From assembly GCF_963853765.1 (NCBI RefSeq), contig NC_088858.1:25296001-25360000 (forward strand): 64,000 nt of DNA, given 5' to 3'. Shown here one piece after another: positions 11,397-55,359 of the stretch. Below the pieces are notes generated by a model. It was not told where the DNA came from. It did not search any database and saw only the letters and a program-made list of their open reading frames with translations. The first letter of the stretch is position 1, and each line of letters opens with the position of its first letter. The stretch comes from Magallana gigas (lineage: Eukaryota). The translations under genes were made by a program, and so were the position numbers.

Positions 11397-11398
11397 GA
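11336..11398. repeat. (GA)n microsatellite
   Basis: About 30 GA units with few interruptions. Confidence 0.95.
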
Positions 11399-13995: not shown

Positions 13996-14513
13996 CTGAA
14001 TTATTTTCTTTGCATGGTAAGTGTATTAAATAATGAGAATAGAAGTTCCTAACTACATAGCACATTTTTTTGGAAGAAACTTCGTAATTCTAAGATAAGA
14101 GGCGTGTTTGCTACTACATGTACATCTACTTTATTTATGAAGTTCATGTAAGTCATGTGGGTCAATAATGAGAATACACACTGAACTTTCTAGTATTAAC
14201 AGTATATTTTGGGGAGCTGTTCAATTATTTATAAAATCCAATAGGATCTAAGGGGAGTATTCTTTAATTGATGTACACTACCTATACATGTAAACATGAC
14301 TATAATACATATTAAGTATATGTGCACTATTGATGCAGAGCAAGAACTTCGTACATGTATTTATAAAACCCGCTGTCTACTTACAAACAATGTATGCATT
14401 CACGTACATGTATATATATAAATATCATAATGTATGAATTTATGACCGCCGCTGTATCAGGACATGAACTAAACAGGTTGAGGATGCAGCGGTTACTTAA
14501 TGGTTGCTGAAAC

Positions 14514-16471: not shown

Positions 16472-16541
16472 ATGGATACTTCTGTCTCCCGATGGATAAT
16501 CTGGGTCTCTTTCCTGTGTCTCGTGGTTCACTCTACTTCAG
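16472..16541 (+). CDS. PKHD1L1: PKHD1L1 coding exon 1: signal peptide MDTSVSRWIIWVSFLCLVVHSTS
   Basis: ATG in GACATGG context, a hydrophobic core, small residues at the cleavage region, and a phase-1 donor at 16542. Confidence 0.8.
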
Positions 16542-18091
16542 GTAGATTTTTTTTACAGATTATTTTTTTTGTTTTATTTGATTGTTCGCAACTTTTATAA
16601 ATATTGCTATTCTTCATCTAATATCACGTGGTAAAAAGATCATGCGTGTGGAATATCGCCTTAATTTGTTTAATTATCAGACCGAGACTGATATAGGTTA
16701 CCGAGCACACACGACTCTGAAAACCCACACCCCACCCACTCTCAAAGAGGAAGGGGGTCCTTAGTCTTTGTGATAAAAGTTTTACTTTCAACTTTTTCCA
16801 CTGGATAATTGATTATTTAAACTTTCAATTGTGTGTAGTTTTTACTGAAATAAAAAGACGTATATGTTTCCAATTTTTGAGGTCCGCCAAAAATTTCATC
16901 AACTGCAACATCATTTAAGGTTTAAATGATGTTGCCATTGATTTTAAACATTCTTCAAGATATTGGTAGCTGTACACCGGATTGAACACGGATCGAGTTC
17001 TTTTCTTTGATCATTCTCAAAACGTTAGGTGGTCAACAGATCTGCCTTAAACTTTAAAATAAGATAATTTTGGCCATTAACTATTTTTTCGCAAAGAAAA
17101 AAATACAAACACAATTTAATATTAGCATTTTCCTATACTTTTTACAGAGCTCTTCATGCAAATGAGGTAAATATAGCCTTAAAATGGCAACGACCATCTA
17201 GCATCCACGTTTCATTTACTATTGGCCAAAATTATCTTATTTTAAAGTTTAAGGCAGATCTCGTGGTTAATTTGTTGACCACCCATGACTACAAAAACCA
17301 TCTATGTTACAAATGCTGATTAGTCCGAAATATCTTACGTTTTCTTGAGAAACGTCAGATTTTTCGGACAAAAATACTGATATGTTCAGCTAATATACTC
17401 ATTCAAGTAATACAACTTTAAACATGCAATAAACAACAGTTACACACTGGAAAAGTAAATCACTTCGTTTTCCGCATGAATGCGCACAGTACACAACGAT
17501 TAGTACCAGCGGATATTGATGTACGTACTATACATAGGCCTAAATACCCAAAATCTAATTTGTATCTATAGAAAAAATATCGAACCTTCATTCATGTGTA
17601 TACTCACCATACATATAACTTAAAGTATTTCATAGCAAATTGTGTTTCAGTTAGTAACAAACTGATAAACAATCAAAGTGCGGCAGGTTATCATATTCCT
17701 CCAGGTGGTCTTCATGCATCCATATATGGACCCAGTGACGTAACTATATATACGTCTCTGATGGATATCGTTTATTTACTTAACAGCTTTTTTTCTACCG
17801 TATTTCAGGTGAGGAAGACTGCAAAAAGACGATAAAAGGACTAGATTATCGGGGTAAAATTTCTACCACTCCTTCCGGTCGAACTTGTCAACGGTGGGAT
17901 TCACAGTCACCCCACAGACATTCTGGGTACGCCGAAAATCTACCGGGAGGGGCCAGCGCCCACGAAAATTACTGCAGAAACCCTAAAGATCATTGGGAAA
18001 CTAAGCCTTGGTGCTACACAACGGATCCAAGGAGACGATGGGAGTACTGCGATATTCCATTTTGTGGTAAATACCGTATAAATCATGAGTC

Positions 18092-18126
<35 letters not shown>

Positions 18127-21100
18127 AACCAGACAACTTTCATGTTGTTTGTAATGCAAACCTCTATGTACTTTGAATCCTTTAGTTTTTAGCTTCGGCC
18201 TTTGTAACTAACATAAAACTGGTGGTTGTTTGGGGGAAGGGGGTGTCACAAGAGAAGTCTTAGTTTATTTTCATTTCCGTAAATGATGCAATTTTTGCTT
18301 AGATTATCAAATTATCAAACTTATATTAAGCATAACATATGATGCAAAAAACATCATGAGACAGAACAAATTGAAAATGTTTTCCATTCGATCACAGGAA
18401 GCTTGGTCCAGTCAATGACCCCCAACCAGGGCAGTCTGTGTGGGGAGACGAGAATTCTGATCAGGGGGGAGGGGTTCTCCAAGGACAACATCAACGAGGG
18501 AAACAAAGTTCGCCTGGTGTCCTCCTCCATGTCGTACGACTGTCCGGTCAACAAAGATGGAACCACCGAGGAAGACATTCTCTGCTTTACCAAGTACGAT
18601 TTATAAATCCAGTATCTTGGTACATATGTATCTTGAAAAAGGGAGGGGTTTTTCACATTTTTTGCTGACCATTTGGAAAAGAGAAAATTAAAATGATAGG
18701 ACATATTTTAAAAAAAAATTTTGATTATGAAAAAATTGGATACTTTGATATTGGTTTATATGTATATTGTGTTAAAGTGGCATGATCACGATTTTGGTAA
18801 AATATATTTTATTATTTAAATGTTAAAATGTTTACAATTGTAAGGCAATTTTAATAGGCAACCAAACTTTGAAAATCATTTGAGTTTTAAGTGAGTTACA
18901 AAGCTTAAAATTCTTTGACATGCAAACAATTGAAAGCTAATGTTTATATTTTGAATGTTGGAGTAAAAATTCAAGTTTTAGACCTAAATAAATGTGTTAA
19001 ACATTAGGAACTGGTTTTTTTATGCTTATTAAAAAGAATATGAAGATAGACAAATCAGCTTCAAAAAAGCGCTTTTGTTTTTACCGGTACATAATAAACG
19101 TAGTTAACAAAAACAGAGCATGAACCTTGTTTACATATAATTGACAAAGAATGATGAGCCCTGTAACTCTATTTGGTAATGCCTGGCTCTCAAATTTCAC
19201 TTGATCATTCCTACAGCATTGTAAATAGATTTAACCAAAATCATTACCATGCCTCTTTGTTACATGTTACATGTAAGTGTCTGCATAAAAATGAACTCAA
19301 GTGTAAAACTGTCGATATTAATGTGTAGATTGATTAAAAAAAGATCGGAAAAAATATTACTAAAACCATATTCATTGATTTGAGAATTTATACTCAAAAT
19401 TATATATATACCTCTCTATTTCTAAAATTGTAGGCCTGGGATGAGAGCTGATTACTATTATGTGAGATTGAATGTGGATGGAGAGGATGTCCCCATAGTG
19501 AATCATTGTAGATACGCAACTGATCCTAGATGTAGATTTCAGGTCAGAAAGGGCGGAAAAAGTATTCCTTTTATTTTTTCATTCATTTCAATATTTATAC
19601 AAAGCGAGTAAAAGATCTTTAAAACTGTATTAGTGATAAGAACATAACCGTACATAATTTGAAGTAAATTAAAGGGCCATTTCACATCTTTAATACTTCT
19701 TCTATATGAGGAAGTTGTGCATCATATTGAAGTCAGCTGAAGTCAATTCTGTGCAGGATTCCCATTTATTAATTTCATAAGATTGCTCGCCTATTATCAT
19801 GTAACTTTCTCTTTATAAATTTCTCTTCTGTAGGTGAGAGCTTACAATACTCCAACAATTACCTCTGTCGAGCCAAGCTCTGGTCCCCCTCAGAGTATCC
19901 TCAAAATCAGCGGAAGAATCGTCACCGACCTTTTTGACACAAACGAGGTAGTGGCCAAAAATGGAAGAACGGAAAAAATCACCAGGGTTTATGCGGGACC
20001 TCAACTTTGCAGTCTGAAGGGTGCCAACGATGTATTGTGAGTATATATTGATTTTGATGATTGAAAATATAAGTTGAGAAAGAGATACTACAATATCATT
20101 GAATTTCAGCTTGTAACGAGCTTTTCTGAATAAAGACTTCTATAAATACTTTATTTATTGAAAATATTTTGCTAATGTCACAATTTAAATGGCTTGTACA
20201 AAGAAATGTACAAATCTGCATGGTATGTGCTATGTTTAAATTTTTTGCAGTTTAATATATTTTCATCTTTTGTTTTGGAGGACAATTTTCTTAACTTCTG
20301 AACTTAATGATAGAGAATTTATTCATCAGGTGTAATAAAAAATTAGATTTACTCGTGACAGAATATATACTCATAAAATGAGTTGGAATAGTTTCTTTGT
20401 TTGTTTTTGTTTTTTGCAGACTTTATAAAGTGTTAACAGCCCAACCAAATATGTATAATTAAGAAAAAAATTTGTCGCTATTGAGGAGACTCTAAAGAAA
20501 TAATGTACCGGCATGCAATGAATTAATTAATAACAACATAAATTCTTGAGATTAAGCACCCCTGGCATATTAAATATTGCAATCATTTTTTGACAGTTTT
20601 GAATTATATGAAATCATTACATGCTCAAAATTTGGTGCTTGCAATTTTACATTCTCCTGATTTGATGCAAAACAGAATATTTAAAGTACTCCTCAAAATA
20701 AAAAAATCTACAAGACTAACAAAATCTGACTGTGTTTTAAGAGCCTGTGGATTGAGTTATTTTAACAAATACAGTAAAACACGGTTATAGCGAACACGCT
20801 TATAATGAATTGACGCTTACAGCGAAGTGACTTTCATTCCCCGTGACTATATTACATGTTGTAAGCTTGACGGATATAACGAATTACGCTTATAACGAAG
20901 CAAAATCGCATGTCCCTGGTGCTTCGTTATAACCGTGTTTTACTGTAAATGAAGTGATTTACTTTACTGGTCAACCAATTGATAATAGATATATATTTTA
21001 AAACTGAGAATGTTAACTCGTATATTGAACTGTTTAACTTTTACAGCTTTGGATTTTCTCTGAATCATGAATCAACTTGGAATGGTCATATGAAATGTAA

Positions 21101-24100
21101 AATGAATGGACAGTTTGTTGGTAAGAAACATTCATTTCTCAGTCTTTGCTGAACTGTATATCAACAGAAATATATGACTGTGTTAAGGTGGAATAACACA
21201 CCTAGAAAAATCACTCATATTTACAGTAATTTTTTTTATTATGAAAGATATAATGACAAATAAACTATACATATGTCAAATAAGCAAACAAATTGCAGTT
21301 TGGGATAAAAAATGATTAAAAAAATTAATTCAGTAAGTAACAACAAAAAGCCCCTGCAGGATTTGAACTCAGGATGTATGGATCACAAGACCCAGGTCCT
21401 AATCCACTCGGCTATGGAGTAAGTTACATGTTGCCATCAAAAAAATTCTTTTAATGAAACGAAATATCGTTTCAATGAGAGGTCAGCCATTTGTTATTCC
21501 ACCTTAATATCTATCATCAAATCATTTAGAAAATTATTCATTTGATTAAATTTTAAATGATGTGTGTTATTTATGAGGGATCTAGGTTAATTGATTTGAT
21601 GTATATAATCAAATGGAAATTGTACTTAAAAGGAATTTTTTTTTTCATTCCCTGACTTTTTGTTTTAAGGTCAGTGAAAATATTAGTAATACATGTATTG
21701 ATAATCAGAAGATGTTCCTCAATTTTGTATCGTCAAACATATAAATGTGCTTCCAACAGCCTTGTTTTGTGTGAAATTGGATTTGAATATTGAATGAGCA
21801 AGCATTTTTTTTTGGATAATATTTTTTTTCATTTTGAATTTTATCGATCATCTAAATTTGATCATTGTAGGTAATCAAAATGTCAGTTATATTGTGAGTG
21901 GAGCATTTGGAAGGTAAGACCGGGATACCTCATCAAAGCTATATTTTATATTAGTATTTTGAAAATATATGGACAATAGCTTTCCTGCGTCATATTGTAA
22001 TGTATAGTAACACTTATAAAAATGGTTTAAATAAATGATCAAATAAATCTATAAAAACCACAAAAATCCAATGTGGTGTATATGATACACACCCCTTTCT
22101 CCCAAATAAATATTCTTGAAAAAAAAGTGTGAATTAATATATTCGGCTATTAAATATATGGTAATGTATGTAATTTATTTAATAAGTGGATAAATGTTAG
22201 AAGTGTTAAAGAATATTTTTGTTTGATGACATTGTTCAGGGCCTGCAGACCACATTCACTGTACCTGAGCAGGACCAAACAGCTGTATCTGTTCCAGTCG
22301 TTCGCGGAGATAATGTCCGTCCATCCGTCTGTGGGCAGTGTTCGTGGGGGCACCATGGTCACAATCACTGGAAAGAACTTTGACCAGACAAGATTGCCTG
22401 CCAAAGTGAAAATAGCAGGTCTGTTTACCTTAATTGATTAATAACTTTTTGATTTTGCTTAGATTTGATCATTTAATTCTGTAGAGCTCTTCTTCTGAAG
22501 AAGGTTAGTATAAAGTCCAAAAATTGCCTTCACCATCCAGCTCTCTTAATGTTCCAATACACACTTGTACATGTATTAATTATCATAATGCATCATGAAA
22601 ACATGGAATGCACCTTTGATTATCAATTATGTATACATGTTAAGTATGACTCTTCGGTTGAAATTTAGAATGTTTACAAAATGAGTCTTTTTTACTTACA
22701 TAAAACTTTATGTATGTTTTTTTTTATTTTATAGGTCAAAACTGTAAGGTCCAATCCCTTACAGACACTAAGATTGTTTGCAAGACTCCATCCAAACCTG
22801 ATGTGATCTACAGCAAATTTCCAGGTACATGTATTCCTTACTTAATATTGCTTACTCCCAGGTAATTTAGCTCAGGTACAGTAGGCCTTTGTTTAACATG
22901 GAGCATATGGTTTAGTGATCCTATGTTTGATAATTACGGTAGTAAACAAAAGGTTGATGGTTCAGATTCTGCTAGTTGCATGTTGTGTCCAGTTTAGACA
23001 AAACACTTTATCTGCATTGTGTTGAACATTTACCTTGCTGACAAAGGGTACTTCCTAATATGCTGAGAGTGACTGACTGATGTCCCATACAGGGGGTGTC
23101 AATACACTGCATGTATCTCAGTCTCATCTGCTTAGTTAGCTTTAGCCTTATAAACATAACATGGCTTGGACAGGAGTTAAAACCCTTACCCCCAGTTCAG
23201 TTATAATTGAAGCTTCCAATTCAGGTTATTCTTAAATACTTCAGTTCAGGTATAATTGAAGCCTCCAATTCAGATTATTCTTACTTCAGTCCAGTTATAA
23301 TTGAAGCTTCCAATTCAGGTTATTCCTAAATACTTCAGTTCAGGTATAATTGAAGCCTCCAATTCAGGTTATTCTTTAATGTTTTTGCAAATTCTTTAAA
23401 AAATTATAATGCTTGTTGCATTAAACTTTTATCGATAATCTGTGAATCATTTGCCTAAAAAAATCATTTGCCTTTGTTGATTTTGCATTTAAGGAAATCG
23501 TGGATTATTGTTGGAGATTTGGAATAAGACTGGTCGACATCTTGATCGTCTTCATGAAGTTCTAGACTTCCATGAGAACATGACTGACTACATCAAATCT
23601 CACACAGATAGGACAAAATACTATGATAACACGTATCAAAATTTTGTCACCAGACACAGTGGGTTCTTTGTACCTCCTTGGACGGGAGATTACTCTTTTG
23701 CCATGAAGGCTGATGACATTGGGTTATTTTACTTCAGTAATACTACAAACCCGAATGATACAGTAAGTCGTCGTTGAGTTTTACCACTTTGAGATTGCAG
23801 ATCAAATCACTGGGTTTTTTTTATCCATCCATCTTTCTTTCACCTTCTCTTGAAAATTCTGACCTTGACCTATTGAATATCATAGTCAAGTAAAATTTCA
23901 AGGTCAGAGGTTAAAAGGAAAGCTGGGTCAATGGTCACTGTTAGAACTGTAAGGACTTATGATAAGGAGACTGGATGATTTACAAATAACCATTGGTTGA
24001 CTTATAATTTATTAATAAGCTATAAACTATTCATAAGTGTAAAGAAAAAGTCCATGTATTTTACCTTAAAAATTTGGGTATTTTCATATATTTTTATATA

Positions 24101-27100
24101 GAGCTCTTCTTGGAAAGGAGATCAATACAGTTTAAAAATGGCCATGTACCATCAAGCCCTCTTAAACAATAAGGAGATTAATTTACAAAGTGACATAAAA
24201 CACATAATGTTTATTTTGCGTATATTTGACATGAAGTGGTAATTAAATGAAGATATGTTGGTTGTTCAGTATATTTTGTTGGTGGTTGTTCTTTATATGA
24301 CGTAGTTATCTTAAAGGTCAAGGTCAGTGGAATAATTACAGTTTTTGATATGTATGGATATCAAATTTGAGAAAGTTTAATTCATTTCAAATTTTTATCA
24401 AATTTTTTTTCTTTTCTTTAACAATATTTCTTGGTTTTTTTTTTCTTTTCTAAAAAAATGTTTAGAAATGCTTGCTAACTGCTGATCCTAGCTGAGTTGT
24501 ATATTAGTAGTGTATTGCTATTATGAAGCTTAAAAATGCATAATGTAAACTTTGTTCACAGATACAACTTCTGAAGGTCAGAAAGTACCTTAACACTTAT
24601 TTCAAATATCCAGATGAACAGATATCACAGAAATTCAGACTAACGGCCGGAGATGCGTAAGTATTTTCATGGAAAGCCTATTTCAAAGAAACAATTCTTG
24701 CACGGAAAGAATTAATACCCCCAAAGAAATTCATTCGAAACAAAGTGTGATTTGAAGATAACGAAGCTTCAATAATGCAGAGTTTATTTTTAATGAAGAA
24801 TTTTTTTCCAGACATTACATGGTGATATTGCAGAGAGACTACGGGGGACCAGGGAGTGTAGACGTCGCTGCCCGATTCCATCAGACAGAACTGACCAATC
24901 AGAGCACATCGTTTGCAGACCAAGAACATCAAATAATAGCAGTTAGATCGACAATTGTGAGAGAAGTCCAGAGTATCTCACTGGTCACCGAAAATGTTCG
25001 TCCTGGGGTCTATGAAGTTCAGAAAGTTCAAATATGCGATCCACTGCAGAGTGGTGCCCCTTTGATGTTTAGGCTTGGATTATATAATGTGTATACAGGT
25101 AGACCATGATTTTTAATCTACAAAATGTTCTTTAATCTGTGTGTAACAGTGTGTTACAAGGTTAACACGTGTTTAACTTTCAGTCAATAAATTGGGTCTC
25201 GGTAGCTCAGGTTGGTGTGCTGGTTCAGTAAGTCAGACACCCCCAGGGTTTTAGTCCTGATTTAGTTTTGCCGACTTGATTTTTTAACCTGTGTTACATG
25301 TGTATAGATGATCTCTGAGTACTCATTAATTTCATCTTTGTGTACAAGTAGTTTTTTAGAATATTTATTGTTCTCCAATCCTCAGCCTCAAAGTATTTTT
25401 ATCATCATAAACATATATGTTATTTATCCTTCAAACTAAATAGATGAAATTACATTTGTATTAGAATAAAATTTTTTTTATGTTATCCATGCATTTTACG
25501 AGGTTATTGCAATTTGCATGGCCATTTTGATTTTAAAAATAAAATGCTTTCTTTGGTCTGATTCATGCGGAATATGAAGGTGGTGGCATTGCAGAAAAAA
25601 TACATAACCCAAGTTAGTGTGCTATGTGTTAGTGTGCTATGTCAATATTTTTTGTAAAGATCGCATAAGTCATCAAAGAAAGCATTTTACTGTTTATATC
25701 TACATCATTCAAATTGTCTCATAATGGAATTTGAGTGTGACGTCCTCAGTTTTATTTTGTGCATGGAAGTCTGTGATTTTTCTAAGGTCTCTGTGGGTTT
25801 TGACCAATTGATAAACGGGGTGTGTAGATTTCAGTCCTGTCAATTTCCTGTCTGTTTCAGTCAATGTAAATTTTGACCAATCAATGAACAGGGCATGTAG
25901 ATTTTAGTGCAAAAAGTTTCCTGTAATTTATAATCATCGATCAATTTGTTCACATGAAGCCGTTTTGACAAGAGCTAATTTGGACCCTGGACAAAATCTT
26001 TTTATACAGGATCTAATCTACTACATTGTCTAGATATAATTTTGTACCTATATATGACTCCATAAAGCTGATTTTTTGACTATTATAGTTTGTTTTTTGT
26101 TTGATTGTAGATGTTTTAACACCTCAGAGCACAACAAGTGGTATCAAAAATGCATTGAAGTCTCTGCCAGTGTTTGATTCGAAGGAACAAGTGAATGTCA
26201 TCAATAAGACTCTGAGTAATGGATGCTTTACAACTTTTATAGAGTTCATCTCAAATCGAGGTAAAGGGAAACTCCAAAAATATATACGCAAGTAGAACCG
26301 AATTTGAGTCAATATACATGTAATGTGTCAATTTTTGTTGGCATTTGATTCTGTAGTAATGAAAGTTCTGCATATGTCTATGTATTCATTTACATTATAA
26401 ATATTGGTTAATGAATGTGAATATAAGCTGATGCGCATTCTGCCAAATAAACAAATGGCTAAATTGAATATACTGTCAATTATACATGTAGTCCGATGTA
26501 TCAATCATACAGTATAATCTTTTTTATACACCCCCGCAAACGAAGTTTGGGGGGGTATATAGGAATCACCTTGTCCATCTGTCCGTCCGTCTGTCCGTCT
26601 GTCTGTGCAATCGTGTCCGGTCCATATCTTTCTTATGGAGAAACATTGGAAGTTCTTACTTCACACAAAGATTGCTGATGACCTAAGGGTGTGTCATGAC
26701 CTTGACTCAAGGTCATTCAGGCAAGGTCAAGGTCACTGGGAAAAAAAATAATAAAACACAAAATTCGTGTCCGGTCCATATCTTTCTTATGGAGAATTAT
26801 TGGAAGTTCTTACTTCACACAAAGAATGCTTATGACCTCAGGGTGTGTCATGACCTTGACCCAAGGTCATTTGGGCAAGGTCAAGGTCACTGGCAGAAAA
26901 AGTGCAAAATTCGTGTCCAGTCATTATCTTTCTTATGGAGAAGCATTGAATGTTCTTACTTCACACAAATATTGCTTATGACCAACAGTTTTAAAAAAAT
27001 AGAACAGTTGTTATTTATAGAAAATGGACGGTGAAATAGATTCATCCAATATTTTCTATAATTGGAAAAATACTCGCATTATAATTTTTATCTTAGCGGG

Positions 27101-30100
27101 GGGTATCAATTGTGAGCTTGCTCACAGTACCGAGTTTATTTCATCAACACAAGCATGCATTACGTTGAATTATTTTGGTTTTGTGCATTTCTGCATCAAA
27201 GAAGAAATCAGTAAGGTGAAGAAATGAATCTTTTTTACAGGTGACTTTGAAGATTTGAAGGTGATCATGAGAAGCACAGAGCTGAAAGTGAATATCACTG
27301 TTGAAGAAGTTCTTGCAGGGGAAGCAACTGGTGAACACTTCACCTTACAGATGGCAGGAGTTATCTCACCCTTATTGACTGGAAAGCCAACTCAATTACA
27401 GGTCTCCAATTATAAAATATTGATTCTTATAACAATTATAAGTTACATGTAAATGTTTTGATAAAAATAAAGTGATTGAACTGGATTTAATATGTTTTTC
27501 TTTGTGTCTTTATTGATTGCATGAAGGTAAATTTTTCCAGCTGTAATGATTATCATTGTGTTTTTGTCTTCATAGATGGAAGAAAAACTTGGTAAGATGT
27601 TTGAAAGCAGGTGCCCCAAGGCCCTGGGAGACCCGGTCAGTAAGCTCCACTACAGTTTTGAGACGGGAAGTCGGCCTGGTCCTATGCATAAAGGAACTAT
27701 TACCTCGGAGGTTGAGGCTTTCTGTGGGAAGAAAAGTATCCTGAATCCCAGTTATATTTACTATGACAGGAGCAATCGAATCACTCTTGGACAAGATGCA
27801 AAAGTGGTAGGTTTAAATTAAGGATTGTTTCATTTATATAATCCCTGCAACAAAGTTTGGGGAGGAGTATAGAAATCACCTTGACCGTCTGTCTGTTTGT
27901 TTGTATGTCAGCTGTGCAATCATGTCTGGTCCATAATTAAAGATATTGAAATGCAGAAGTTCTCTTTAAATGTAGAATTTAATCATTTTATATATATCGA
28001 ATAAGAAATATGTTGTAGTTTAAAACACACTGATGAAAAGCTGATTATTGCAATCATTAACAACCAATTGAAACTAATTCAATTTAGAAAACTGATCTGA
28101 ACACGAAGACACACTCATGCATACAAGAAATAGATAAAAATAACTCCATAAGCTACGTACTGAAAATTACACTATTCCAATGCATTGTTTACATCATTGG
28201 CCATGATTAGGTCTGTGTGACATCATAGGTCTGTGTGACATCATAGGTCTGTGTGACATCATAGAATCACGCATAGGAGTGGAGAGAAATTTTTTTTTCA
28301 GGTGTTGAGCTCTCATGTTGATATCCTAGCTGGTAAATAGTAATGCATTATGGCCAAATTCTACTATACACATAGTTTAACATTTTTTTTATATCAAGCA
28401 TTTACAATAATTATGAAAGAAAATCATAATGTTGAAAATCGTGACCTTTAACAAAAAATGGAAGCTAGTCAGTAATGCTTTTACTTGACTTACTAGTTAT
28501 TTTTCCATTGCAGGTCTGCTTTGCGTATCGCGGGAAGCTGCAGAACTTCTTCAAGTTGGGATTTTCATACAAGAACAACAAAGGAGCGACAGTGGACAAC
28601 CAATATGCCTACCCATCAGTCACATTTAAACAATCTCCTGGGTATAGAACTCAATTAGCTTTTGGTTTTAAAAAAAAAAATCTTTTAAAATTTATCGTGA
28701 AATTAGTTTGTTAGAAAAAAAATCCTTTATCTAAAGGACAAAATAATATGAATATGACCCTGTATAATTACATTGTCATTGTCACAAAATTAAAGATGTC
28801 AAAAATTACCCCAAAAATTGAAATTACAGATAAAATATTGTAAAGGTAATATAATAAATAAATAAATGCAAGTTATGGTTTATTGATAGAAATTAATCAA
28901 TTATACATGTATTTAAGTGACAAAGATATTTTATGTATTTTTTGTTAATATTTGCAGTTGGAACTACAAATGCGTGGACATAGAAACTGAAGCGAAAAAA
29001 GGAATAATTGGAACAGTGTTTAAAGTGTTTCTGATTGAAGTCAGGAAAGACACGTCTGAGGATTTCCTCTATCTGGACGAGGTCTACATCGGCAAAAACC
29101 CAACCAGTGTGGAAGAAGGTACTGTACAAGGAAGGAAAATTCATGTTTTTTCTTCTATCATAGAAGTGGGGAGGAGATTACTGTACACAGGAAAATATTC
29201 GCCCCGTTTTATTTTCACCCCTTTCAACCTTGTTGTCTGCAGGCAAATTTATGACTGGGCGAATTCTTATGTATCAAATTATCTCTCTTTAAACACAACT
29301 ACTTCTGGGCGAATTCAAGATGGGGCAAAACCGTTTGTAAGTAAAGAGGGGGGGGGGGGCACAGGCAAAAATAGCCCTGTGTACAGTATCATATGTTTGT
29401 TTGGGTGGTAGGAGTAAAATGTAATTTAATATGCATTCATGGCTTACATCAAATGTGTATCATTTCCTTGTCCTGTAGAGAATGTGAACCTGATGAGACT
29501 GAGGCCGGTGATGCCCAGTGGACAGCTGGTAGATAGAGTCAATGTAAACAAAACCGAGGAGAATGGGACCACAGTCTATCATGTGGAGTTCATACCACAG
29601 GCCTGCTCCTACAACTTTGCTTTGTTAGCGGTGGTGCCAGGGCAGGTAGGAAAGCATAGTTTGATTTTTGTCGTTGTTGATTTTATCTGTAGGCCAAAAT
29701 TCATGAGAAGTAGCACAATATCAATGCAATATGAATTCTGTGAACTACCCTTTGCCTGTTACTTGAAATTTCAGATTTTTTTTTTTTTTTTATATCGTCT
29801 TCCATTTATTTCATAACATACAAAAGAGATTTTGAGGCAAAACCTCCACAGAGGCCCTCTAACTATTCCTCACCTGGGGTGCCAGGGGCCCCCTGGATCG
29901 GAAGTTTGTTATATACAAAACATTTTTAAATATAATCAGAGATTGAAAAAGTTTACATTCTTATATTGATATATGAAACATAAATGACATAAGTTGATAA
30001 CATAACATACAAAAGAGATTTTGAGGCAAAACCTCCACAGAGGCCCTCTATAACTATTTCTCACCTGGGGTGCCAGGGGCCCCCTGGATCGGAAGTTTGT

Positions 30101-33100
30101 TATATACAAAACATTTTTTAAATGTAATCATAAATTGATAAAGTTTACATTCTTATATTGGTATCTGGGTCATAAATGACAAAAGTAGATAAAACTGAGA
30201 AATAAGAATATACGTGTCTATAAATCTATGCATATAATGCCTTTTTAAGCATACGTATGCGTAGTTATATAAATATTCTGATATATAATTATGTTATATA
30301 GTTCAAAATATAAATATGCAGTATAGTAAGGTATAACAAAGCAAGTGCAAAGTAGCAAAATATAAAATTTCAGATTTGACTGATGTGAAATAATTGGAGA
30401 GATTATATTTGATTACAGATTTCCAATGGGACGGTTCTTAGTGTATCCCGGCTGTCCTCTGCCTCTCCCCCTGTGAGGGGAAACTTTTCTGTCACCTTCC
30501 GCAACAAAACCATGGACGGTATGTATTGGTACATGTATTTATATATCTAAACAAAGATGTGATTTCTCATCTATTGCTTGATCATGCAGGTTCAAAGTCC
30601 ATCCTTTCCTGAATTTATTAGGAATTGTTGGCTAGTTGAAATTTTTCTCTAATGTAATGTTCAGAAGCAGATTGAAAGTTTGGGTGGGGGTGGCTGCATG
30701 GACTTTCTTTTCAGAAATCTTGACAAGCAAAGAAAAAATAAAAAAATGGTTTTGGTTATGTTATGTCTAACTTTGCAAAAAAGTTCCAACACCTATGTAC
30801 TTAGCACATTATACATTGTACATTAGACATGCCATATGCCATGCATTATAAAGCACCCACACTTTTTATCAAATGCCTCAACTACAGCTGTGGGAAATTG
30901 CAGGTATATTCAGAAAGCATACTTTAAAAGTTTATCAAGGGCTATTGTTTTAATATACATGTATGTTTTGAATTGTATAGTTGAACTCTGGTTTTCACCA
31001 TTACAGGGACATGGTCACGATTTTGGTCAAATTCTATATTTATGTTTTGCTTTAGAAATGCATTTTTAATGATCAAATAAATTTAGTTTGAGAGTCATTC
31101 CTAGAGTTATAAGCAAGATAAAGGGCTCACAATTCTTTGTCATGTAAACAAGGCTCGTGCCCTGTTTTTCTTTACATATGTTCAATATACCAGTGAAAAA
31201 TCTTTTTCGGTCTTTTTATTTATCTTAAGCATATATAAACAGTTCCTAACATTTAACATGTTCGATTTAGGTTTACAACTGAAATTTTTACTCCAGCGTT
31301 CAAAATGTCTGAAACAAACGCTTTGTTTCCACAGCGAAAATTTTCAAGCTCTGCAACTGGCTTATAACTTAACAATTGAAACTCAAATTTCCATTGCCTA
31401 TTGAGAATGCCTCTCTAAAGCATAGTAAATATTAAAATCGGAAAAATAATTTTTGACCAAAATCGTGACCATCCCCCTTTAAAGTCACCTTCACTATGTT
31501 TTTTTTTTTCAATTGATCATTAAGGCATTCCATTCACTGTGGATGGGGCGAGGCTGGCAAGCCTCCTACAGTCGGGGTTACCAGAAATGGGCAATCTAAA
31601 CACCTACAAACACGGAAAATGTGCAGAGTTTGACCTACATGTTGGATTCCATTCCAATGCCGGGGACCAGGAAACCTTACAGGTATTGCTCAGGTGTCAT
31701 AGAAATTTTGTCCACTCTCAGATCTGTTTGTGACAAGTATCTTAGTTAGATTTTTTTTATAACAATTTTTGCTTCCAATCTATTTGCTTTTCACTTGAAA
31801 GATTTCCGCTAATTACCATAAGTTAGCATTGTTGGTAGCTACAGTATTCAATCATCTCATGAGCTTAGATTAAGACATATCTTTACATGTTGCTATTGAA
31901 TAGTATTTAAAACTTCATTCATCTAAATAAGTGAAAGAAAATGAAAGAATATAAATTCTCATTTGAAGATATGCTCTATACAGCCCCAGATCTCTTGCTA
32001 TTTTTCAAAAAGATAGTAATATTTAATAGAATGCCTCATATGTATAAATTGTAGATTACAAGTTACGCTGAGGGTGAAAACGTGACAGTAGATGTTAAGA
32101 CGGTCACTGACGGCAAAGTGTGGCTGAACCCCATCCCAGGGGACTTTTTGGTCACCCCCCATGACACCCCTCAGGTTATGGCCTATATCAATGACATTCC
32201 CACCAAGTGCTCCGGGGACTGTTCCTGGGATTGGTCAAGATCGGCCACGCCCACCATCCTCTCAGTGTCACCTGACACAGGTGAGTGATTAAGATACAGT
32301 TGTCCAAAGTTCTTTTGAACAGAAGATGTAACATCAACATATATATATTATTTAAAGTGTACACTTTAAGTTGAAATATTCAATGCACTGCATGTATTTG
32401 CCATGTAAAAATAAACTTTAATGATTATAGAAATGATGTTGTAACCATTAGGCTGGAAGCCAGATATGGGGGATTTCTGATTTTTTACTTTTTTACTCTG
32501 GATGTACATGTAATTAGTTTGCAGCAGTTCTTCCTTTAAACAGAATGGTCAAATCACAAAATCGTTTTCAATGGTGATCCGTACATTCTCATCCATATTG
32601 ATCTTCAAATCATATAGATATTTGAAAACTCATTAGTCAAATTTCTTTTTAGGTTTTCCAACATCCACAGAGATTACAATTACGGGCACAGGTTTCCATG
32701 GTAACCACACCCTCAACCGTGTCATGATAGGAGGGGTAGCCTGTGTGACCAGTTCGTCCAATGATACCCACATTGTGTGTAGAGTAGGGGACGGAGAAAC
32801 AGGGACCTTCCCAGTGATGGTCAACGTGGAGGGACTCGGGAACGCGGATAACACCAACAACAGTGTCATGTTTACCTACCAGTTCAGCATCCAGTCCATG
32901 GCTCCCAGCTCTGTCTCTCTTGGTGGTAAGGACATTTTGATGGAGTGTGGTCAGAGTTGTTTTCTAAACTGGAAAATTTGGCCAACAATATTTAACCAGG
33001 TTTTCTAACAGAAAAATCCGGTTATTGAAATGATGAAAATGGCGGGCTGGCAACTGCCAAAAGAGTACCTTTATTGTACAGATCACTCCTCCTACAGTTT

Positions 33101-36100
33101 TCAAGATAGGAAGTTTGTTCTTTTGCAGTTCAATAGTACATATATCAGAGGTGTGCATATTGCTAGGATTTTGATATCTGATAATTTATGAAAAATATAC
33201 TAGCTTTTGAACTTACCAGTAGTCATTTTTTGACAAAATATTGCATTTCTCTGGATATGTTAGGTAGAGTTTATCAATTCAGGGTTGACATGGATTATGG
33301 ATGCAGTTCACATATAAGAAAATCCGGTTTGCTGTCACATTGACAGCTTTTCACTTGTTTCTTAAAATTCTTTAAAAATGAGGAAAAAATTTCTGGGATT
33401 AAAGTTTTATACATATAATTATACAGTCATTTGTACCAGTTCATTTTATTGACTTTGTGCTACATTATCTTCTGGTCTTTATTTTAGGTGGACTGAATTT
33501 GACCTTGGGAGGATTTGGATTCTCCAAGAAGGATGAGGTTTACGTGGGGGGTAAGGCTTGCCGTACCCTGTCAAGTTCCACCACCCAGACTGTGTGTCTC
33601 ATCCCCCCTTCTGTGAGTACAACTCAAGTTCTATCAGTTAGACAGATGAATTGCTCTAAATGGAGATTTCTCAGTCTTCCTGTGCTGAATTGAAAAAGCC
33701 TAAACAATATATAGCTATTCTCAATTAACACATCTTACTGTGTATTAAAAATTGAGAACCATTTTTTCACTGTTGGTCAGAATTTATATTTAATATTTAT
33801 TTTTCATCTTTTTAGTCGGAGAGCAAAAATGAAAGTGTTCTTGTCAAACAAGGAAATACTGGGACGAATGTTACCCATACTAAATCTCTGGAGTATTCTA
33901 GTGAGGGCATGATTGTGATTTCCTCTATCGAGCCCAATGCAACTTATGTAGCAGGTAAACCACATCAGTTAATACGATATTAATTTCACATGAATGGAAA
34001 TCGAAACATCTCTACAGTGTAATTCAAATGCATGTACATGTAGCTTACAACTGAGTTTTTTTCCCGTACCCACAGGAGGGACAGAGATCACGATACAGGG
34101 GTCTGGTCTGAGCAGTATGGAGTCTGTAAGGATAGGGGATGTCCCGGTCACCTACACAAACTCCTCGGACAAAGAGATTAAAGTGGTCCTACCCCCCAGA
34201 CCGGCTGGGGCGTACTCTGTGCAGCTCCTAGGGCCAAGTGGAGTGGGGGTAAACAGGTGGGTCCAAGAAGTTGTTATGCAGTGCTATCATTTAAAATGTC
34301 TGTTACGAAGAGTGTTGCCATCTATATACTGTAAACCTACATGTATTTGTTGTGATGAACTGGTTTGTGGTGACTAATTTTCACTATTAGAGTAGATTTT
34401 CAAGAAAATAAAAGACGTTAAAGGACTTGTTTGCAACAAGAAATGTTCATGATAATGAGGCTCTCGTGAACCTCGCAGTCTGTATGAATTTGCATTGTCT
34501 TATAGAACAATACTTAATTTGAGTCAAACATGAAACATTTACTTTTAATGTAAACATTTTAATAAGAAAAAAACAAACCCCAAAAAGACTTTTATTAAAG
34601 TGATTCTTACTCTTTTTTTTATAATGAATGTTTTTTTCCCCATGTTTATTCAACTTTGAAATTTGAGGGAAATACACAGTTGTTACAGCTGTAAATTTGT
34701 TTGATTTCAATCGTTCTTATATATGGTCAAGTTATACTGTAATTGCATTGTTTTAATGTAGTGCCAATGAGGTTCCCTCTGTGGAATGGAGATTGACTGT
34801 GACTGACATCAGCCCCCTCCGCGGATCACTGAGAGGGGGGGCCATGCTGACCATTCGGGGGGACGGGTTCTCTCTGAACAAGACCAGGAACTCTGTAATG
34901 GTAGGTCGACACCGGTGTGAGGTGGAGACAGCCAAGGTCACAGAACTGACCTGTCGGGTCAAGGACACAGCACAAGTCCATCGTGTGGATAACTCAGGGA
35001 TCCATCCACGTATGTCATCATTATAACAAACTTCTGTTTAATATCTATAACCATTTATTTGATGCAGTTTAAGAATTGACAACATTTTAGAAAAAATAAA
35101 ACAACTGATTTTCCATAGGGTGTATGGAGCATGGATTACTAGTACATCGGAGCAAAAGCATGAATAAAATTTTGAAGTGTTTTCCTCCATTTTATCCTAA
35201 AACTTCATTTAAATGAGTTGATCATTTTCATTACAGAGTTTAAACTGAGTGGATATGCCTGGAATCCCCAGTACCTGATTATCAAGGTGGGTGACATAGT
35301 GGAGTGGAAGTGGAGCTTCGCCTCTTACATCACAGGGATGAAGCCTAGGGTCGTGGAGGTCAAGGATGAACTTTCAGTGGAGGAGATGGAAGGAGGGTTC
35401 AACAGTGGACCAGGGAGGGAATCAGGTACATGGAGTTGAATTGTACTTTAACTTAACGCCCCTTTTACAATAAATTGGCGCACGAGCAGAAGCGACAAAA
35501 TATTCGTGAAACTGAAAAAATCAGATATGGTTTGTAAACTTGTAAATAATCACAATCTCATGATTGCACAACACACGCATAAACAGCTGTGAATAATGTT
35601 ATGATCTTTAAAATTATGCATTGCTCTTGTGGGTATACAAAATGTTGTCATTGCATTGAACTATTTGGAGCACATTTGTCGGAATAGTGTGCATGTCCAC
35701 TATTTTGAGAAGACTTGATGTGACCACAAAAACTCATGCAACAAATGCGAGAGCTCATGCAAAGTATGTGATAGGAGCAAAAAAATTTGATTGCAAAAAC
35801 TCATGCAACAAATGCGAAAGCTCATGCAACGTATGTGATAGGAGCCAAAAAATTCTGATTGCAAAGTGTTATAAAGTGCTTGTGCACCAATTGTGAATGA
35901 GGTTGAAGAAATGTAGCTCTTCAACAAATAAAATGGGGAGAAGGTGATGGATTTTAAATTAACTTTTACACTGAGATTATGTGCAGGTTTCTCTGTGCTC
36001 TTGTGCAAGATTTTGCCTTTGTCAAAAGCTCATAGAAAATTATTGCAATGCCTTTAATTTCAGTTGGACCAAAGTTAACCATTTATGTATTATTCATAAT

Positions 36101-39100
36101 CTTGAAATTCATATAATACTATAATGATTATATATTCTAATATTATTTATTTTGCTGAGAGGTATCTATTTGTTAAAATCTAACCTAGATTCTATCCTAA
36201 GATCTATTGAAATAGAATAAGTCATAGGGGAAGAGGGAGTTACAAATCCTATATTACAACTTTAACAAATTTTTTTTTTGTCCAGGGGTGTTCCGTCATC
36301 AGTTCACTGCGGTTGGCAGGTACTGTTATTGGAGTGACTTTGTGGACCAGTACAAGACCACGTGGTTCCGGGGGTGTGTCACGGTGGAGGATCTCAGTTC
36401 TTATGTGGCGGAGATCAGTGTCAAGGTCAATGGATTTGAAGCAGTCTATGACAGAGTGGCACCACAGTGTAAGAATTGAAGTCATGTTTTCTTAATATTG
36501 TCTGTATCCAGTTTATTGAGTATTATCCCTTTAATTTCACAAATTTTGAAAAGTGTAGAATTAATGGGTAATACGTTTTTACAAAATTTCATTTCAGTTC
36601 TGTATGTCGCTAATAGTACTTGATCATGAGCCTTCGTTTCATTCATTGCAGCACCCTCTTCATCAGCAGTTAATGCTCCTGGAGCAGGATGTAGCCAAGA
36701 CCTGACACCATTGTCAAACTGTTCTGTTCCAGAACCAACTGGAGGGAACCCCAGCAAGTTCAACTTTAAATTCTGGACATGTGCCACTCCCATAGTTACA
36801 GGGGTGTCCGAAAGTAATGGCACAGTTAATACCAACATCACAGTACAAGGTACAGGCTTGTCCAATAATGACTGTCAGAACGAGATCAGTTTCGGAGATG
36901 GGAAATGTGTTGGTGACGGAGACAGTGGACCAGATGTCGTGTGTAACATTGATAACTCAAATTCTCCCTCAGTTGGACTTCTTCAGCCAATCAAAGTGAG
37001 GCACAATAACCTTGGGTACGCTTTGGTGGCCATTAACAGTGTTATGAAAAGGTCATTTGCCCTGAAGCCCTCTGTGACAGAGGTCATGCCCTCTAAAGGT
37101 TCAGAAGTTGGGGGATCAGTGATTCACATCATGGGGTCTGGTTTTTCCATGGATAAAGATTTTGTGTCTGTCACCATTGGAGGGTATTCTTGTGGTTTAA
37201 TGAATGTCACCTACAGTAAAATTGTGTGTCGTACAAGTCAAGGTCAAGGTGAAAAAGATGTCCAGGTCGTAATCAGGTCCTCACAAGGTCAACAGATTCC
37301 AGCAGTGTGTGAAGGGACATGTAAATTTACCTATGATGCAGGTTTCACTCCTCAAATGACCTCAGTATCTCCCATGACGGTGAATGGAACAACTGATACA
37401 ACTCTAGAAATTGAAGGCAGTGGTTTTGGGAATGAAACAGCTGACATTACAATTAAGATAGGAGGAGAAAGGTGTGAAGTGACAGTTGTATCAAATTCCT
37501 CAGTTCAGTGTACAGTAGGCAATCTCCCTGCAGGTTCGAATAACCAGGTGGTTATGGAAGTGGCTGGGAAAGGTCTAGCCAGGGGAAGCATCAGGGTGAC
37601 AGGAAACCCAGTGATCACAGAAATCTCTCCCGCCGAGGGAAGCATCCATGGTGGAACTCTGATTTCCATATCTGGAAACGGTTTTGTGAAGGATCAAACC
37701 ACTGTCTCTATAAAAGGCAAGCCATGCAGGATTGTCAGTACAAGTTTGTCCATGGTGAGCTGTATCACACCTTTGAATGGAATAGAAGAGAGTGTGAATG
37801 TTGGAATTATCTCCAATACAATATCATACCCAATGGTGGCCTTTAACTACAGTAACCAATCCTCCCCTAATATTTCCTCCATCAGTCCCACCAATGGCTC
37901 AGCAGGCACAGAGATTACCATCACCGGCACTGGGTTTGTCAGTCAGAAGGAAAACATAACCGTCAGTATCGACAAAGCCGATTGTACTGTGAGCTCTTCA
38001 TCGGAGACAGAAATCGTCTGCACTGCCGGAGCCAACCTTGTAGGATCCTTTCCTGTACTAGTCAAAGTGGACGGGAAAGGAAACTCAGACAATCGCTCTG
38101 AGTTTGAATACCAACTGCTTGTTACCTCTATTTCTCCAAGTACAGGTCAGTTTTAATGTCAGTTAGGGACATTTGAAAATAAGGCAACTTGAATTTACTT
38201 TGAAAGAAAATAGTTTTGGTATTACTATGATAAAAGTTTGCATTCTGCGAAAACTAGAATTTAAGGAAAGCATTTTTAACCCAACAACTATCACTTTGAA
38301 GATAAATTTACTTTTAGGTTTTCTTGAGATCAGTAGTAGAAATATGTTTATAATTTGATGGATAAATTAAATGAAATGCATTGAAACTTTGTCTTTGAAT
38401 TTTAGGTGGTATTGCTGGTGACCAGTTAGTGACTATTTCTGGATCTGGATTTGATAGTTCCACATCCGTCTGGATTTGTGACAGAAAGTGTGAGCGTGAT
38501 CTCTCCGCCAACCAGTCAACCTCGGAGTTCCGATGTCGAACGCCAAAAGCTGCAGGTAAAGCTAAAATCTTACTTGATTGTTATAAATTCTTTTAGTATT
38601 TTCAGAGATGCACAATTAATGCATCCTTTAAAAAATACTTAAAGGGAGGGAATTTGCTCATGCATTCACCTGTATGAATCAAATTTTAGAATTTAGTTTA
38701 AATTTTAGTTATAAAGTATTAACTTACGGGTAGCTGTTAACAATAAAATTGTAATCAAAAACAAATTAAAATTAGTGTGTTCTACTATAGATTCCTAATT
38801 AAACATGAGGAATTAATATCCGCATAAAATGCATGAAAGACATCTTGCAACTTTTAAAATCTTTCTTTTTTTTTTTGGACAGATGTAAACTAAATGAAAA
38901 TATGATAAAACTTAGGTGTTAGCGATTTTATATTCCTATTTGATGCAAAATGTTTAATGTTTGAATTGCGGAATTAAGTACTCCCATAAAATATGGAATC
39001 TTAACAGTATTAAACTTTGAATTAATTCCATCAATTTAATTTTAACTGATTATCTTATTTTTAAAAATTTTAAAAATTATCTTTTCTTAAAACCTTGCAA

Positions 39101-55322: not shown

Positions 55323-55359
<37 letters not shown>

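What the first reader, a model, noticed from the sequence alone, without database searches (positions are those of the whole stretch)
17809..18066. Kringle domain exon shuffled onto the N-terminus of fibrocystin-L
Seen: a complete six-Cys kringle sits on one symmetrical phase 1-1 exon with good splice sites, exactly between the signal-peptide exon (phase 1) and TIG1 (phase 1). It has no in-frame ATG-initiated ORF, so the ORF track misses it. Established: kringles spread by phase-1 exon shuffling (plasminogen, HGF, ROR, Kremen), and vertebrate PKHD1/PKHD1L1 begin directly with IPT/TIG domains. Inference: this is a lineage-specific chimeric receptor with a new distal ligand-binding tip. Because the exon is 1-1, it could also be a cassette that switches kringle+ and kringle- isoforms. 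The aromatic/cationic part of the lysine-binding site is retained (PWCYT, RRRWEY), but the D-x-D anionic pair is replaced (RNPKDHWE), which suggests altered specificity.
Basis: partly seen in the sequence, partly recalled or inferred. Interest (0 to 1): 0.78.

Follow-up and report, generated by a model that had tools for sequence, protein, structure and literature searches.

The report
Kringle exon added to oyster fibrocystin-L
One Pacific-oyster copy of the giant membrane protein fibrocystin-L has gained an expressed kringle domain at its outer tip by insertion of a single exon, which its closest relative in rock oysters lacks: a clean but modest example of exon shuffling whose function is untested.

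Summary
Window 17809-18066 (+) is a 258-nt phase 1-1 exon encoding a complete six-cysteine kringle (Pfam E 2.5e-25; model TM about 0.8 to plasminogen kringles).

RNA contigs splice it to the signal-peptide exon (16541>17809, one run) and to the TIG1 exon (18066>18398, three runs from three studies). No skipping junction was seen.

The host gene (16472 to about 57428) is a fibrocystin-L-like type I membrane protein, collinear with the Saccostrea echinata orthologue.

In Saccostrea the signal exon joins TIG1 directly:
- the S. cucullata protein shows this;
- the gap-free 8.3-kb first intron of S. echinata holds no kringle.

None of 164 other fibrocystin-like proteins whose TIG1 region could be located has an N-terminal kringle. 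The most economical reading is a gain on the Crassostrea/Magallana branch by insertion into a phase-1 intron.

The nearest kringles (64-66%) are single exons of tandem multi-kringle genes and share the unusually long loop. Against a close relative's genomic contig the exon differs at 0.8% and its flanking introns at 6-10%, so it is constrained.

A cassette role is unsupported and ligand binding is inference. I could not see whether public oyster gene models already include the exon.

The parts
16472..16541 (+). Exon 1: ATG plus a 23-aa signal peptide (MDTSVSRWIIWVSFLCLVVHSTS) and the first base of a Gly codon (phase 1). Donor GT at 16542.
   Evidence: Sequence. Joint 16541>17809 in RNA contig X1 record 2. 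Upstream region 16212-16296 aligns to L001:1956-2040, upstream of the Saccostrea echinata first exon.
16542..17808 (+). Intron 1a (1267 nt). Contains a MITE-like element at 17028-17283 with 42-nt inverted termini.
   Evidence: Joint described as 'skips 1267, GT..AG'. Inverted repeat I1.
17809..18066 (+). Kringle exon: 258 nt, phase 1-1, 85-aa six-Cys kringle.
   Evidence: It differs at 2/258 nt from the close relative's genomic contig L006, against 17/267 and 32/331 aligned positions (gaps counted) in the flanking introns.
18067..18397 (+). Intron 1b (331 nt). A (CT)n microsatellite lies at 18090-18131.
   Evidence: Joint 18066>18398 in X1, X2 and X6. Repeat D1.
18398..18593 (+). TIG1 exon (first IPT/TIG domain), acceptor in phase 1.
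   Evidence: Sequence. 83% identical to P0167 residues 5-68. Joints 18066>18398 and 18593>19434.
19434..21119 (+). The next three coding exons, confirmed by RNA: 19434-19540, 19832-20036, 21047-21119.
   Evidence: X2 record 7 and X6 record 11, with GT..AG joints.
16472..57428 (+). Whole fibrocystin-L-like gene: about 43 tblastn blocks collinear with residues 5-4489 of P0167. Domains: TIG repeats, a CEMIP-type beta-helix and a G8 domain (Pfam) and a single C-terminal transmembrane helix. The stretch 41588-41959 aligns to the first-G8 region of P0167, although Pfam gave no hit for the ORF 41603-42001.
   Evidence: Transmembrane segment TGIIVAVAIVGVALLIMVVAVVYW in the last exon, 57096-57398. The 3' end is taken from ORF 57081-57428.

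Best explanation
The window holds one of the fibrocystin-L (PKHD1L1-like) paralogues of an oyster. An earlier scan note names it the Pacific oyster, and the RNA runs that hold the sequence are labelled oyster. The gene encodes a protein of about 4,450 aa with a signal peptide, a huge TIG/PA14/G8/beta-helix ectodomain, one transmembrane helix and a short tail. In this lineage a single symmetrical phase 1-1 exon carrying a complete kringle was inserted into the ancestral phase-1 intron between the signal-peptide exon and the TIG1 exon. The mature protein therefore starts with a kringle as its membrane-distal tip. Shown: the exon is included in every spliced transcript contig that covers it; it is absent from the orthologous Saccostrea intron; it is under purifying constraint. 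Inferred: the donor was a tandem multi-kringle gene whose kringles each sit on their own exon. The nearest relatives, 64-66% identical, are the second kringle exon of such genes and share the extended NPK..E..PWC loop. Also inferred, with roughly 40% confidence: the kringle adds a protein-binding site to the tip of the ectodomain. Its specificity probably differs from classical lysine binding, because the Asp55/Asp57 pair and Lys35 are replaced while the aromatic groove and Arg71 remain.
For: Kringle identity. Splicing: one contig carries the signal exon, the kringle and TIG1; two more carry the kringle, TIG1 and three further exons; the three come from three studies. Host gene. Orthology: the window groups with Saccostrea echinata and S. 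cucullata 'A' proteins at 100% SH-aLRT with 73% identity; the next clades out are the Saccostrea 'B' paralogues, then Pinctada. Absence in the orthologue: S. cucullata P0277 reads signal peptide then TIG1. The S. echinata locus L001 has exon 1 at 2130-2195 with a phase-1 GT donor and TIG1 at 10531-10728, with no N and no kringle match at E<=10 anywhere in the 104-kb locus. Rarity: of 220 fibrocystin-like proteins of 2,500 aa or more, 164 have a locatable TIG1. None of these has a kringle before it, and 120 start TIG1 16-45 residues from the N-terminus. No listed protein carries PF00051 in the precomputed Pfam column. Constraint: exon 2/258 differences against 49/598 in the flanking introns versus L006, Fisher p 2e-6. 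Donor type: L034 has five tandem kringle exons and L003 two, and in both the second one is closest to the window's kringle.
Against: The exon 1 to kringle joint rests on one contig in one run whose library type is only guessed to be RNA, although removal of both introns shows it is RNA. X2's contig starts 114 nt inside intron 1a, so some transcripts are unspliced there. Only Saccostrea could be examined as a sister lineage. No Crassostrea virginica, Ostrea or other Crassostrea sequence was reachable, so the age of the gain is unknown and loss in Saccostrea is not strictly excluded. The donor genes come from unidentified organisms at only 64-66% identity. No binding, localisation or expression data exist for this particular paralogue.
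Confidence: 0.8

Rival explanations
1. The kringle exon is older. It was present in the common ancestor of the oyster 'A' paralogue, or earlier, and was lost in Saccostrea.
For: Only one sister lineage was examined. The 8.3-kb Saccostrea intron is much longer than the window's 1.27 + 0.33 kb and has clearly been remodelled.
Against: The B paralogues, Pinctada, Mytilus, scallops, clams, gastropods and deuterostomes all lack it. This scenario therefore needs one gain plus one loss, against a single gain. No kringle remnant is detectable in L001 at E<=10.
Confidence: 0.12
2. The exon is a regulated cassette. Kringle-plus and kringle-minus isoforms coexist, and the minus form reproduces the ancestral protein.
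For: Skipping keeps the frame: G+GA gives Gly, exactly the Saccostrea arrangement. Symmetrical exons are the usual substrate of cassette splicing.
Against: No 16541>18398 joint appeared in four runs, while the inclusion joints were found. Both splice sites look strong. However, contigs drop minor isoforms and the raw-read run laid only about two reads on these exons.
Confidence: 0.15
3. The exon is a neutral passenger: recently exonised, tolerated, and without a function of its own.
For: No functional data exist. The canonical lysine-binding acidic pair is not intact.
Against: All six Cys and the nearly invariant kringle core residues are intact. The exon is about ten times less diverged than its flanking introns against L006. 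The three RNA runs show no variant in the exon, although several appear in the neighbouring TIG exons.
Confidence: 0.07
4. Assembly or annotation artefact: a kringle exon from another gene was misplaced in this intron.
For: None found.
Against: An independent genomic contig (L006, from Logan run SRR13616521) carries the kringle exon followed by the TIG1 exon at the same spacing. Spliced RNA contigs from three studies join them.
Confidence: 0.01

Closest known systems
Fibrocystin-L / PKHD1L1 (and PKHD1 fibrocystin)
   Same: Signal peptide; about 13 IPT/TIG repeats; a PA14-like region; two G8 regions, each followed by a right-handed beta-helix (CEMIP-type); one C-terminal transmembrane helix and a short tail. 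Collinear with Saccostrea fibrocystin-L-like P0167 over 4,485 residues.
   Different: Vertebrate and all other sampled family members go from the signal peptide straight into TIG1. This one has a kringle in between. It is one of about three mollusc/oyster paralogues, not a 1:1 orthologue of the vertebrate gene.
Kringle domains of plasminogen, apolipoprotein(a), HGF and ROR1/2
   Same: Six-Cys triple-loop fold, 45-55% identity, TM 0.75-0.80. Carried on a phase 1-1 exon, as is classical for kringle modules (my own knowledge of the exon-shuffling literature).
   Different: It is a single kringle at the N-terminus of a TIG/G8 receptor, with no protease, PAN, Frizzled or WSC partner. The Asp55/Asp57 positions read Lys and Glu with a 2-residue insertion, and Lys35 is Gly, so classical lysine binding is doubtful.
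Tandem multi-kringle genes on contigs L034 (ENA ERZ1756083) and L003 (Logan SRR31435204), organisms unknown
   Same: Their second kringle exon is the nearest relative (64-66%) and shares the long NPKxxxExxPWC loop. In L034 that exon ends in Cys followed by G|GTAAG, as the window's exon does.
   Different: They are multi-kringle arrays without TIG or G8 parts. The identity is too low, and the species too uncertain, to name them as the actual donor.
P0077: an intronless 4,643-aa Kringle-TIG-Kringle-TIG-G8-beta-helix protein on a 1-Mb metagenome contig (ENA ERZ25072740)
   Same: It combines kringles with TIG, G8 and CEMIP beta-helix domains.
   Different: It is a very distant, long-branch relative (35% identity in the beta-helix exon). 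Its kringles sit at residues 182-255 and about 1092-1160, behind an N-terminal segment in which Pfam found no domain, not directly after the signal peptide. It is evidently an independent fusion.

Membership tests
Kringle domain (Pfam PF00051) | Profile score above the curated cut-off | tested here: met
   89.1 bits against a cut-off of 34.3, E 2.5e-25, profile positions 4-79 of 79.
Kringle domain (Pfam PF00051) | Six cysteines in the 1-6, 2-4, 3-5 pattern and the conserved core (NYCRNP, PWCYT, RWEYC) | tested here: met
   Cys at residues 4, 26, 55, 68, 80 and 85. The invariant and nearly invariant columns of a 60-sequence alignment are all present. The disulfide pairing itself was not tested.
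Kringle domain (Pfam PF00051) | Kringle fold | tested here: met
   Model pLDDT 80.6. Foldseek probability 1.00 and TM 0.75-0.80 to plasminogen K1/K2/K4/K5, apo(a) KIV, HGF and ROR1 kringles.
Lysine-binding kringles (plasminogen K1/K4 type) | Anionic Asp55/Asp57 pair plus cationic Lys/Arg35 and Arg71 around an aromatic groove | tested here: not met
   In the HMMER alignment to K4, position 55 is Lys, position 57 is Glu after a 2-residue insertion, and position 35 is Gly. Arg71, Trp62, Tyr64, Trp72 and Tyr74 are present. Binding itself cannot be tested with these tools.
Fibrocystin-L / PKHD1L1 family | Many IPT/TIG repeats, G8 domains and right-handed beta-helix (PbH1/CEMIP) regions in the family's order | tested here: met
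   In the window: five TIG repeats (36711-38156), one more TIG (33994-34377), a CEMIP beta-helix (42114-43616) and G8 (44934-45347). The gene is collinear with P0167, which has 13 TIG, PA14, two G8 and two beta-helix regions.
Fibrocystin-L / PKHD1L1 family | Type I membrane topology: N-terminal signal peptide and a single C-terminal transmembrane helix | tested here: met
   Hydrophobic N-terminus in exon 1. The only real hydrophobic 19-mer besides it lies near the C-terminus, at residue 4350 of the pseudo-protein; a second hit, at residue 677, lies in a stretch of the tblastn-built pseudo-protein that contains X placeholders for stop codons. No dedicated signal-peptide or transmembrane predictor was available.
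Fibrocystin-L / PKHD1L1 family | Phylogenetic placement inside the family | tested here: met
   The window nests in the bivalve fibrocystin-L-like clade, sister to Saccostrea 'A' at 100% SH-aLRT (quick IQ-TREE, LG+G4).
Exon shuffling by insertion of a symmetrical module into an intron | Module exon in phase 1-1, inserted in an intron of the same phase | tested here: met
   Phases read from the sequence and confirmed by the RNA joints. The Saccostrea exon 1 donor and TIG1 acceptor are also phase 1.
Exon shuffling by insertion of a symmetrical module into an intron | An orthologous 'empty' intron in a related lineage | tested here: met
   L001:2196-10530 has no kringle and no gaps. The S. cucullata protein goes from the signal peptide to TIG1.
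Exon shuffling by insertion of a symmetrical module into an intron | An identifiable donor gene | tested here: inconclusive
   The nearest kringles, at 64-66%, lie in tandem multi-kringle genes of unknown organisms. The other kringle genes of the same genome could not be fetched.
Cassette (alternatively skipped) exon | A skipping junction 16541>18398 in transcripts | tested here: not met
   Not seen in X1, X2, X6 (contigs) or X19 (raw reads, about 1% of the run, about two reads on these exons). Power is low.

The most novel reading that the evidence does not exclude
A recently gained kringle, now under purifying selection, has given one oyster fibrocystin-L paralogue a new ligand or partner at its distal tip, for example an extracellular-matrix, mucus, food-particle or microbial surface protein in digestive-gland or ciliated epithelia. 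Its specificity would differ from lysine binding. With Saccostrea as the 'empty' state, this would be a natural before/after pair for studying how a module insertion re-tunes a giant ciliary or coat receptor whose ligands are unknown even in vertebrates.
Probability: 0.3. Interest if true: 0.5.

Novelty: new variant of a known kind. Interest (0 to 1): 0.35.

Why it matters
Fibrocystin-family proteins are huge and medically relevant: PKHD1 is the polycystic kidney disease gene, and PKHD1L1 is, to my own knowledge, a hair-cell stereocilia coat protein. Their extracellular ligands are unknown. Here a module was added cleanly to the very tip, with both the filled state (this oyster) and the empty orthologous intron (Saccostrea) available. 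That makes a tidy, datable textbook case of phase-1 exon shuffling outside vertebrates. It also gives a handle for asking what the tip of such an ectodomain touches. A 2026 single-nucleus atlas preprint lists three fibrocystin-L genes as hepatopancreas-cell markers in the Pacific oyster, which suggests where to look. Otherwise this is an ordinary gene with an unusual but unsurprising domain gain.

Tried and rejected
1. I searched for the window's own or other Crassostrea/Ostrea full-length proteins. Two word-index searches (P0002 region 3595-3935 and P0167 region 1-500) and the representatives search returned Saccostrea, Pinctada and scallop proteins but no Crassostrea, Magallana or Ostrea fibrocystin-L. 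I therefore could not see whether public gene models already include the kringle, nor date the gain inside Crassostrea.

2. The kringle-only word search, limited to 47-149 aa, gave one near-identical genomic read-through ORF (P0314, contig L006). It also gave 60-68% kringles on contigs L002-L012 and L034. None of these had TIG1 nearby.

3. A JGI metagenome scan with the kringle gave 20 loci at 59% identity or less (one 25-residue partial match, L033, reached 64%), and none carried fibrocystin parts.

4. Look-ups of P0316, P0437 and P0439 contigs returned nothing on record.

5. I looked for a transposon signature flanking the exon. Only an internal MITE-like element in intron 1a and a (CT)n run after the exon were found, with no repeats bracketing the exon.

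6. I checked for an alternative in-frame start inside intron 1a, prompted by X2's contig starting at 17695. It is rejected because an in-frame TAA lies at 17781-83 (read directly).

7. Rfam gave no match in the window.

8. Literature searches for kringle with PKHD1L1 or fibrocystin returned two incidental papers (one per search) that were not opened; I found no description of the architecture.

9. The scan's own index has nothing at this place or by sequence.

Full report
**Observation**

Window 17809-18066 (+) reads, from 17811, as an uninterrupted 85-aa peptide, EEDCKKT...WEYCDIPFC, with six cysteines. It scores 89.1 bits (E 2.5e-25; cut-off 34.3) against Pfam Kringle over profile positions 4-79 of 79. 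It matches all five kringles of human plasminogen in the PDB. An AlphaFold2 model built on 60 kringle sequences has mean pLDDT 80.6. It superposes on plasminogen, apo(a), HGF and ROR1 kringles at TM 0.75-0.80 with Foldseek probability 1.00.

The exon is preceded by a pyrimidine tract and AG (17807-08) and followed by GTAAAT. It is 258 nt long, with two bases completing a codon at its 5' end and one base starting a codon at its 3' end, so it is phase 1-1. Upstream, an ATG at 16472 opens a 23-aa hydrophobic leader that ends with one extra G before a GT donor at 16542. Downstream, the exon starting at 18398 begins with two bases that complete a Gly codon and then encodes an IPT/TIG domain.

**Expression and splicing**

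Public oyster RNA runs hold about the exonic fifth of the 2.3-kb stretch. I laid four runs on 16200-22100.

- A 450-nt contig in X1 joins 16541>17809 and 18066>18398, so it carries signal exon, kringle and TIG1 together.
- A 1,016-nt contig in X2 and an 893-nt contig in X6 (a second organism label) join 18066>18398>18593/19434-19540/19832-20036/21047-21119.
- All joints are GT..AG.
- No 16541>18398 joint appeared.

There are caveats. The exon 1 to kringle joint rests on one contig. X2's contig begins 114 nt inside intron 1a, which I read as unspliced RNA because an in-frame TAA at 17781-83 blocks any alternative start. Contigs drop minor isoforms, and the raw-read run contributed only about two reads here.

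**The host gene**

Large + strand ORFs downstream carry five TIG repeats (36711-38156), a CEMIP-type beta-helix (42114-43616), G8 (44934-45347) and another TIG. A tblastn chain of about 43 blocks from 18400 to 57398 is collinear with residues 5-4489 of P0167, Saccostrea echinata 'fibrocystin-L-like' (4,494 aa). Identity over 4,145 aligned columns is 73%. P0167 has 13 TIG repeats, a PA14-like stretch, two G8 domains and two beta-helix regions. The last exon encodes a single transmembrane helix and a short tail. The gene is therefore a complete fibrocystin-L-like type I receptor, CDS about 16472-57428.

**How restricted is the kringle?**

An exhaustive HMMER search with the beta-helix exon returned 150 representatives. 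Two word-index searches added about 160 named fibrocystin-L proteins from bivalves, gastropods, a brachiopod, echinoderms, hemichordates, amphioxus and vertebrates. phmmer with the window's kringle against all 313 hits only P0077 and its duplicate P0276. No listed protein carries PF00051 in the precomputed Pfam column.

Of 220 proteins of 2,500 aa or more, 164 have a locatable TIG1. In 120 of them it starts 16-45 residues from the N-terminus, meaning a signal peptide only. In the window it starts at residue 111.

A maximum-likelihood tree places the window with the Saccostrea echinata and S. cucullata 'A' proteins at 100% SH-aLRT. Next come the Saccostrea 'B' paralogues, then Pinctada, Mytilus and the scallops.

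The S. cucullata A protein, P0277, reads MDPALVQRTVGIFVIFLVTAG-G-VKVNRVTPNHGSL: a signal peptide followed directly by TIG1. The S. echinata model lacks a signal peptide, so I fetched its locus, L001. The true first exon is at L001:2130-2195 (MDSVFLPRILWIFIICLVKAR plus G, donor GT). It lies just downstream of an 85-nt block that is 74% identical to window 16212-16296. TIG1 is at L001:10531-10728. The 8.3 kb between them contains no N, and tblastn finds no kringle at E<=10 there or anywhere else in the 104-kb locus.

The orthologous intron is thus 'empty' in Saccostrea and 'filled' here. With every outgroup also empty, a single gain on the Crassostrea/Magallana branch is the most economical reading. 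Loss in Saccostrea remains possible, and I put it at about 0.12.

**Constraint**

An independent genomic contig from another run (L006, Logan SRR13616521) carries the kringle exon followed by TIG1. Against it the window differs at 2/258 exon positions, both conservative replacements (R>K, E>D). The flanking introns differ at 17/267 and 32/331 aligned positions, gaps counted, and TIG1 at 0/83. Fisher p is 2e-6. No variant in the kringle exon appeared in the three RNA runs, while the neighbouring TIG exons show several.

**Possible source**

In the word-index search, which is limited to proteins of 47-149 aa, the closest non-self kringles are genomic read-through ORFs with Cys-Gly-Lys at their ends, reported at 60-68% identity (64-66% by tblastn over the whole exon). 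That ending is what a G|GTAAG-type donor produces.

- L034 (ENA ERZ1756083) carries five tandem kringle exons.
- L003 (Logan SRR31435204) carries two.
- In both, the second kringle is nearest to the window's (66% and 64%).
- That second kringle shares the window's long NPKxxxExxPWC loop, which is two residues longer than in its sister kringles and in plasminogen K4.

This points to a multi-kringle gene of that type as the donor. The organisms are unknown and the identity is modest, so this is inference. Earlier scan notes list several kringle genes in this same genome, two of them on the same piece. I could not fetch them.

**Lysine-binding site**

In the HMMER alignment to plasminogen K4, the window reads NP-K-D-HW-E-T-K-PWC against NP-D-A- - -D-K-G-PWC. 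Asp55 is Lys, and Asp57 is Glu after a two-residue insertion. The position of Lys35 is Gly (HRHSG against HRHQK). Arg71, Trp62, Tyr64, Trp72 and Tyr74 are conserved. Classical omega-amino-acid binding is doubtful, and a different ligand is likelier than none, given the constraint on the exon.

**Other architectures noticed**

P0077 is a 4,643-aa protein encoded without introns on a 1-Mb metagenome contig. Its order is Kringle, TIG, Kringle, TIG, G8, beta-helix. It sits on a very long branch and is an independent fusion. The combination of domains is therefore not unique in nature, although the N-terminal placement in a metazoan fibrocystin-L is. P0310 (JGI) has a fibronectin type II domain before TIG1, which shows that the N-terminus of this family accepts added modules.

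**Mechanism, known versus inferred**

Shown:
- the domain and the exon structure;
- inclusion of the exon in mRNA;
- the orthologous empty intron;
- sequence constraint;
- type I topology.

Inferred:
- the direction of change (gain);
- the donor type;
- that the kringle acts as a distal binding module with non-classical specificity.

A 2026 preprint reports three fibrocystin-L genes as markers of hepatopancreas cells in the Pacific oyster. I cannot say whether this paralogue is one of them.

**Novelty and score**

I found no paper pairing kringle with fibrocystin or PKHD1L1 in this sense. I could not see the public oyster gene models, so the architecture may already sit unremarked in databases. 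It is a new variant of a known kind: a well-documented, lineage-specific domain gain of the classical exon-shuffling type. It is neat and testable, but not surprising to a specialist. Interest 0.35.

Noticed in passing
window 20769-20947: A MITE-like element with terminal inverted repeats (TACAGTAAAACACGGTTATA...TATAACCGTGTTTTACTGTA) inside an intron. RNA contigs pile up on it to summed depths of 5,000-14,500 in three runs, so it belongs to a very abundant, transcribed repeat family.
   Followed up: partly
window 17028-17283: A second MITE-like element in intron 1a with 42-nt, 98% complementary termini (17038-17079 and 17220-17261). It does not bracket the kringle exon.
   Followed up: no
window 18090-18131: A (CT)n microsatellite starting 24 nt after the kringle exon's donor site. 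The read-laying tool skipped 18084-18136 as a repeat; where the indels that raise intron 1b divergence against L006 lie was not examined.
   Followed up: no
L001:2130-2195 (Saccostrea echinata, GCA_033153115.1 JAVQLB010000002.1): The public model P0167 starts at a surrogate ATG (gene called from L001:10001, about 530 nt upstream of the TIG1 exon) and has no signal peptide. The real first exon (MDSVFLPRILWIFIICLVKAR, phase-1 donor) lies 8.3 kb upstream, so the annotation misses exon 1.
   Followed up: yes
L013:1001-14932 (ENA ERZ25072740, contig ctg126399): An intronless 4,643-aa gene with Kringle-TIG-Kringle-TIG-G8-beta-helix-G8-beta-helix order, probably from a microbial eukaryote. It is an independent kringle/fibrocystin-like fusion.
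   Followed up: partly
P0310 residues 48-92 (JGI, 4,667 aa): A fibrocystin-like protein with a fibronectin type II domain between the signal peptide and TIG1. This is another N-terminal module addition in the family.
   Followed up: no
window 17695-17808: RNA contig X2 record 7 starts 114 nt inside intron 1a and runs unspliced into the kringle exon. This is probably nascent or intron-retaining RNA, and an in-frame TAA at 17781-83 rules out a coding extension.
   Followed up: partly
L034:210-2841 and L003:56-935: Tandem multi-kringle genes (five and two kringle exons on the contigs held) from unidentified organisms. Their second kringle is the closest relative of the window's kringle.
   Followed up: partly
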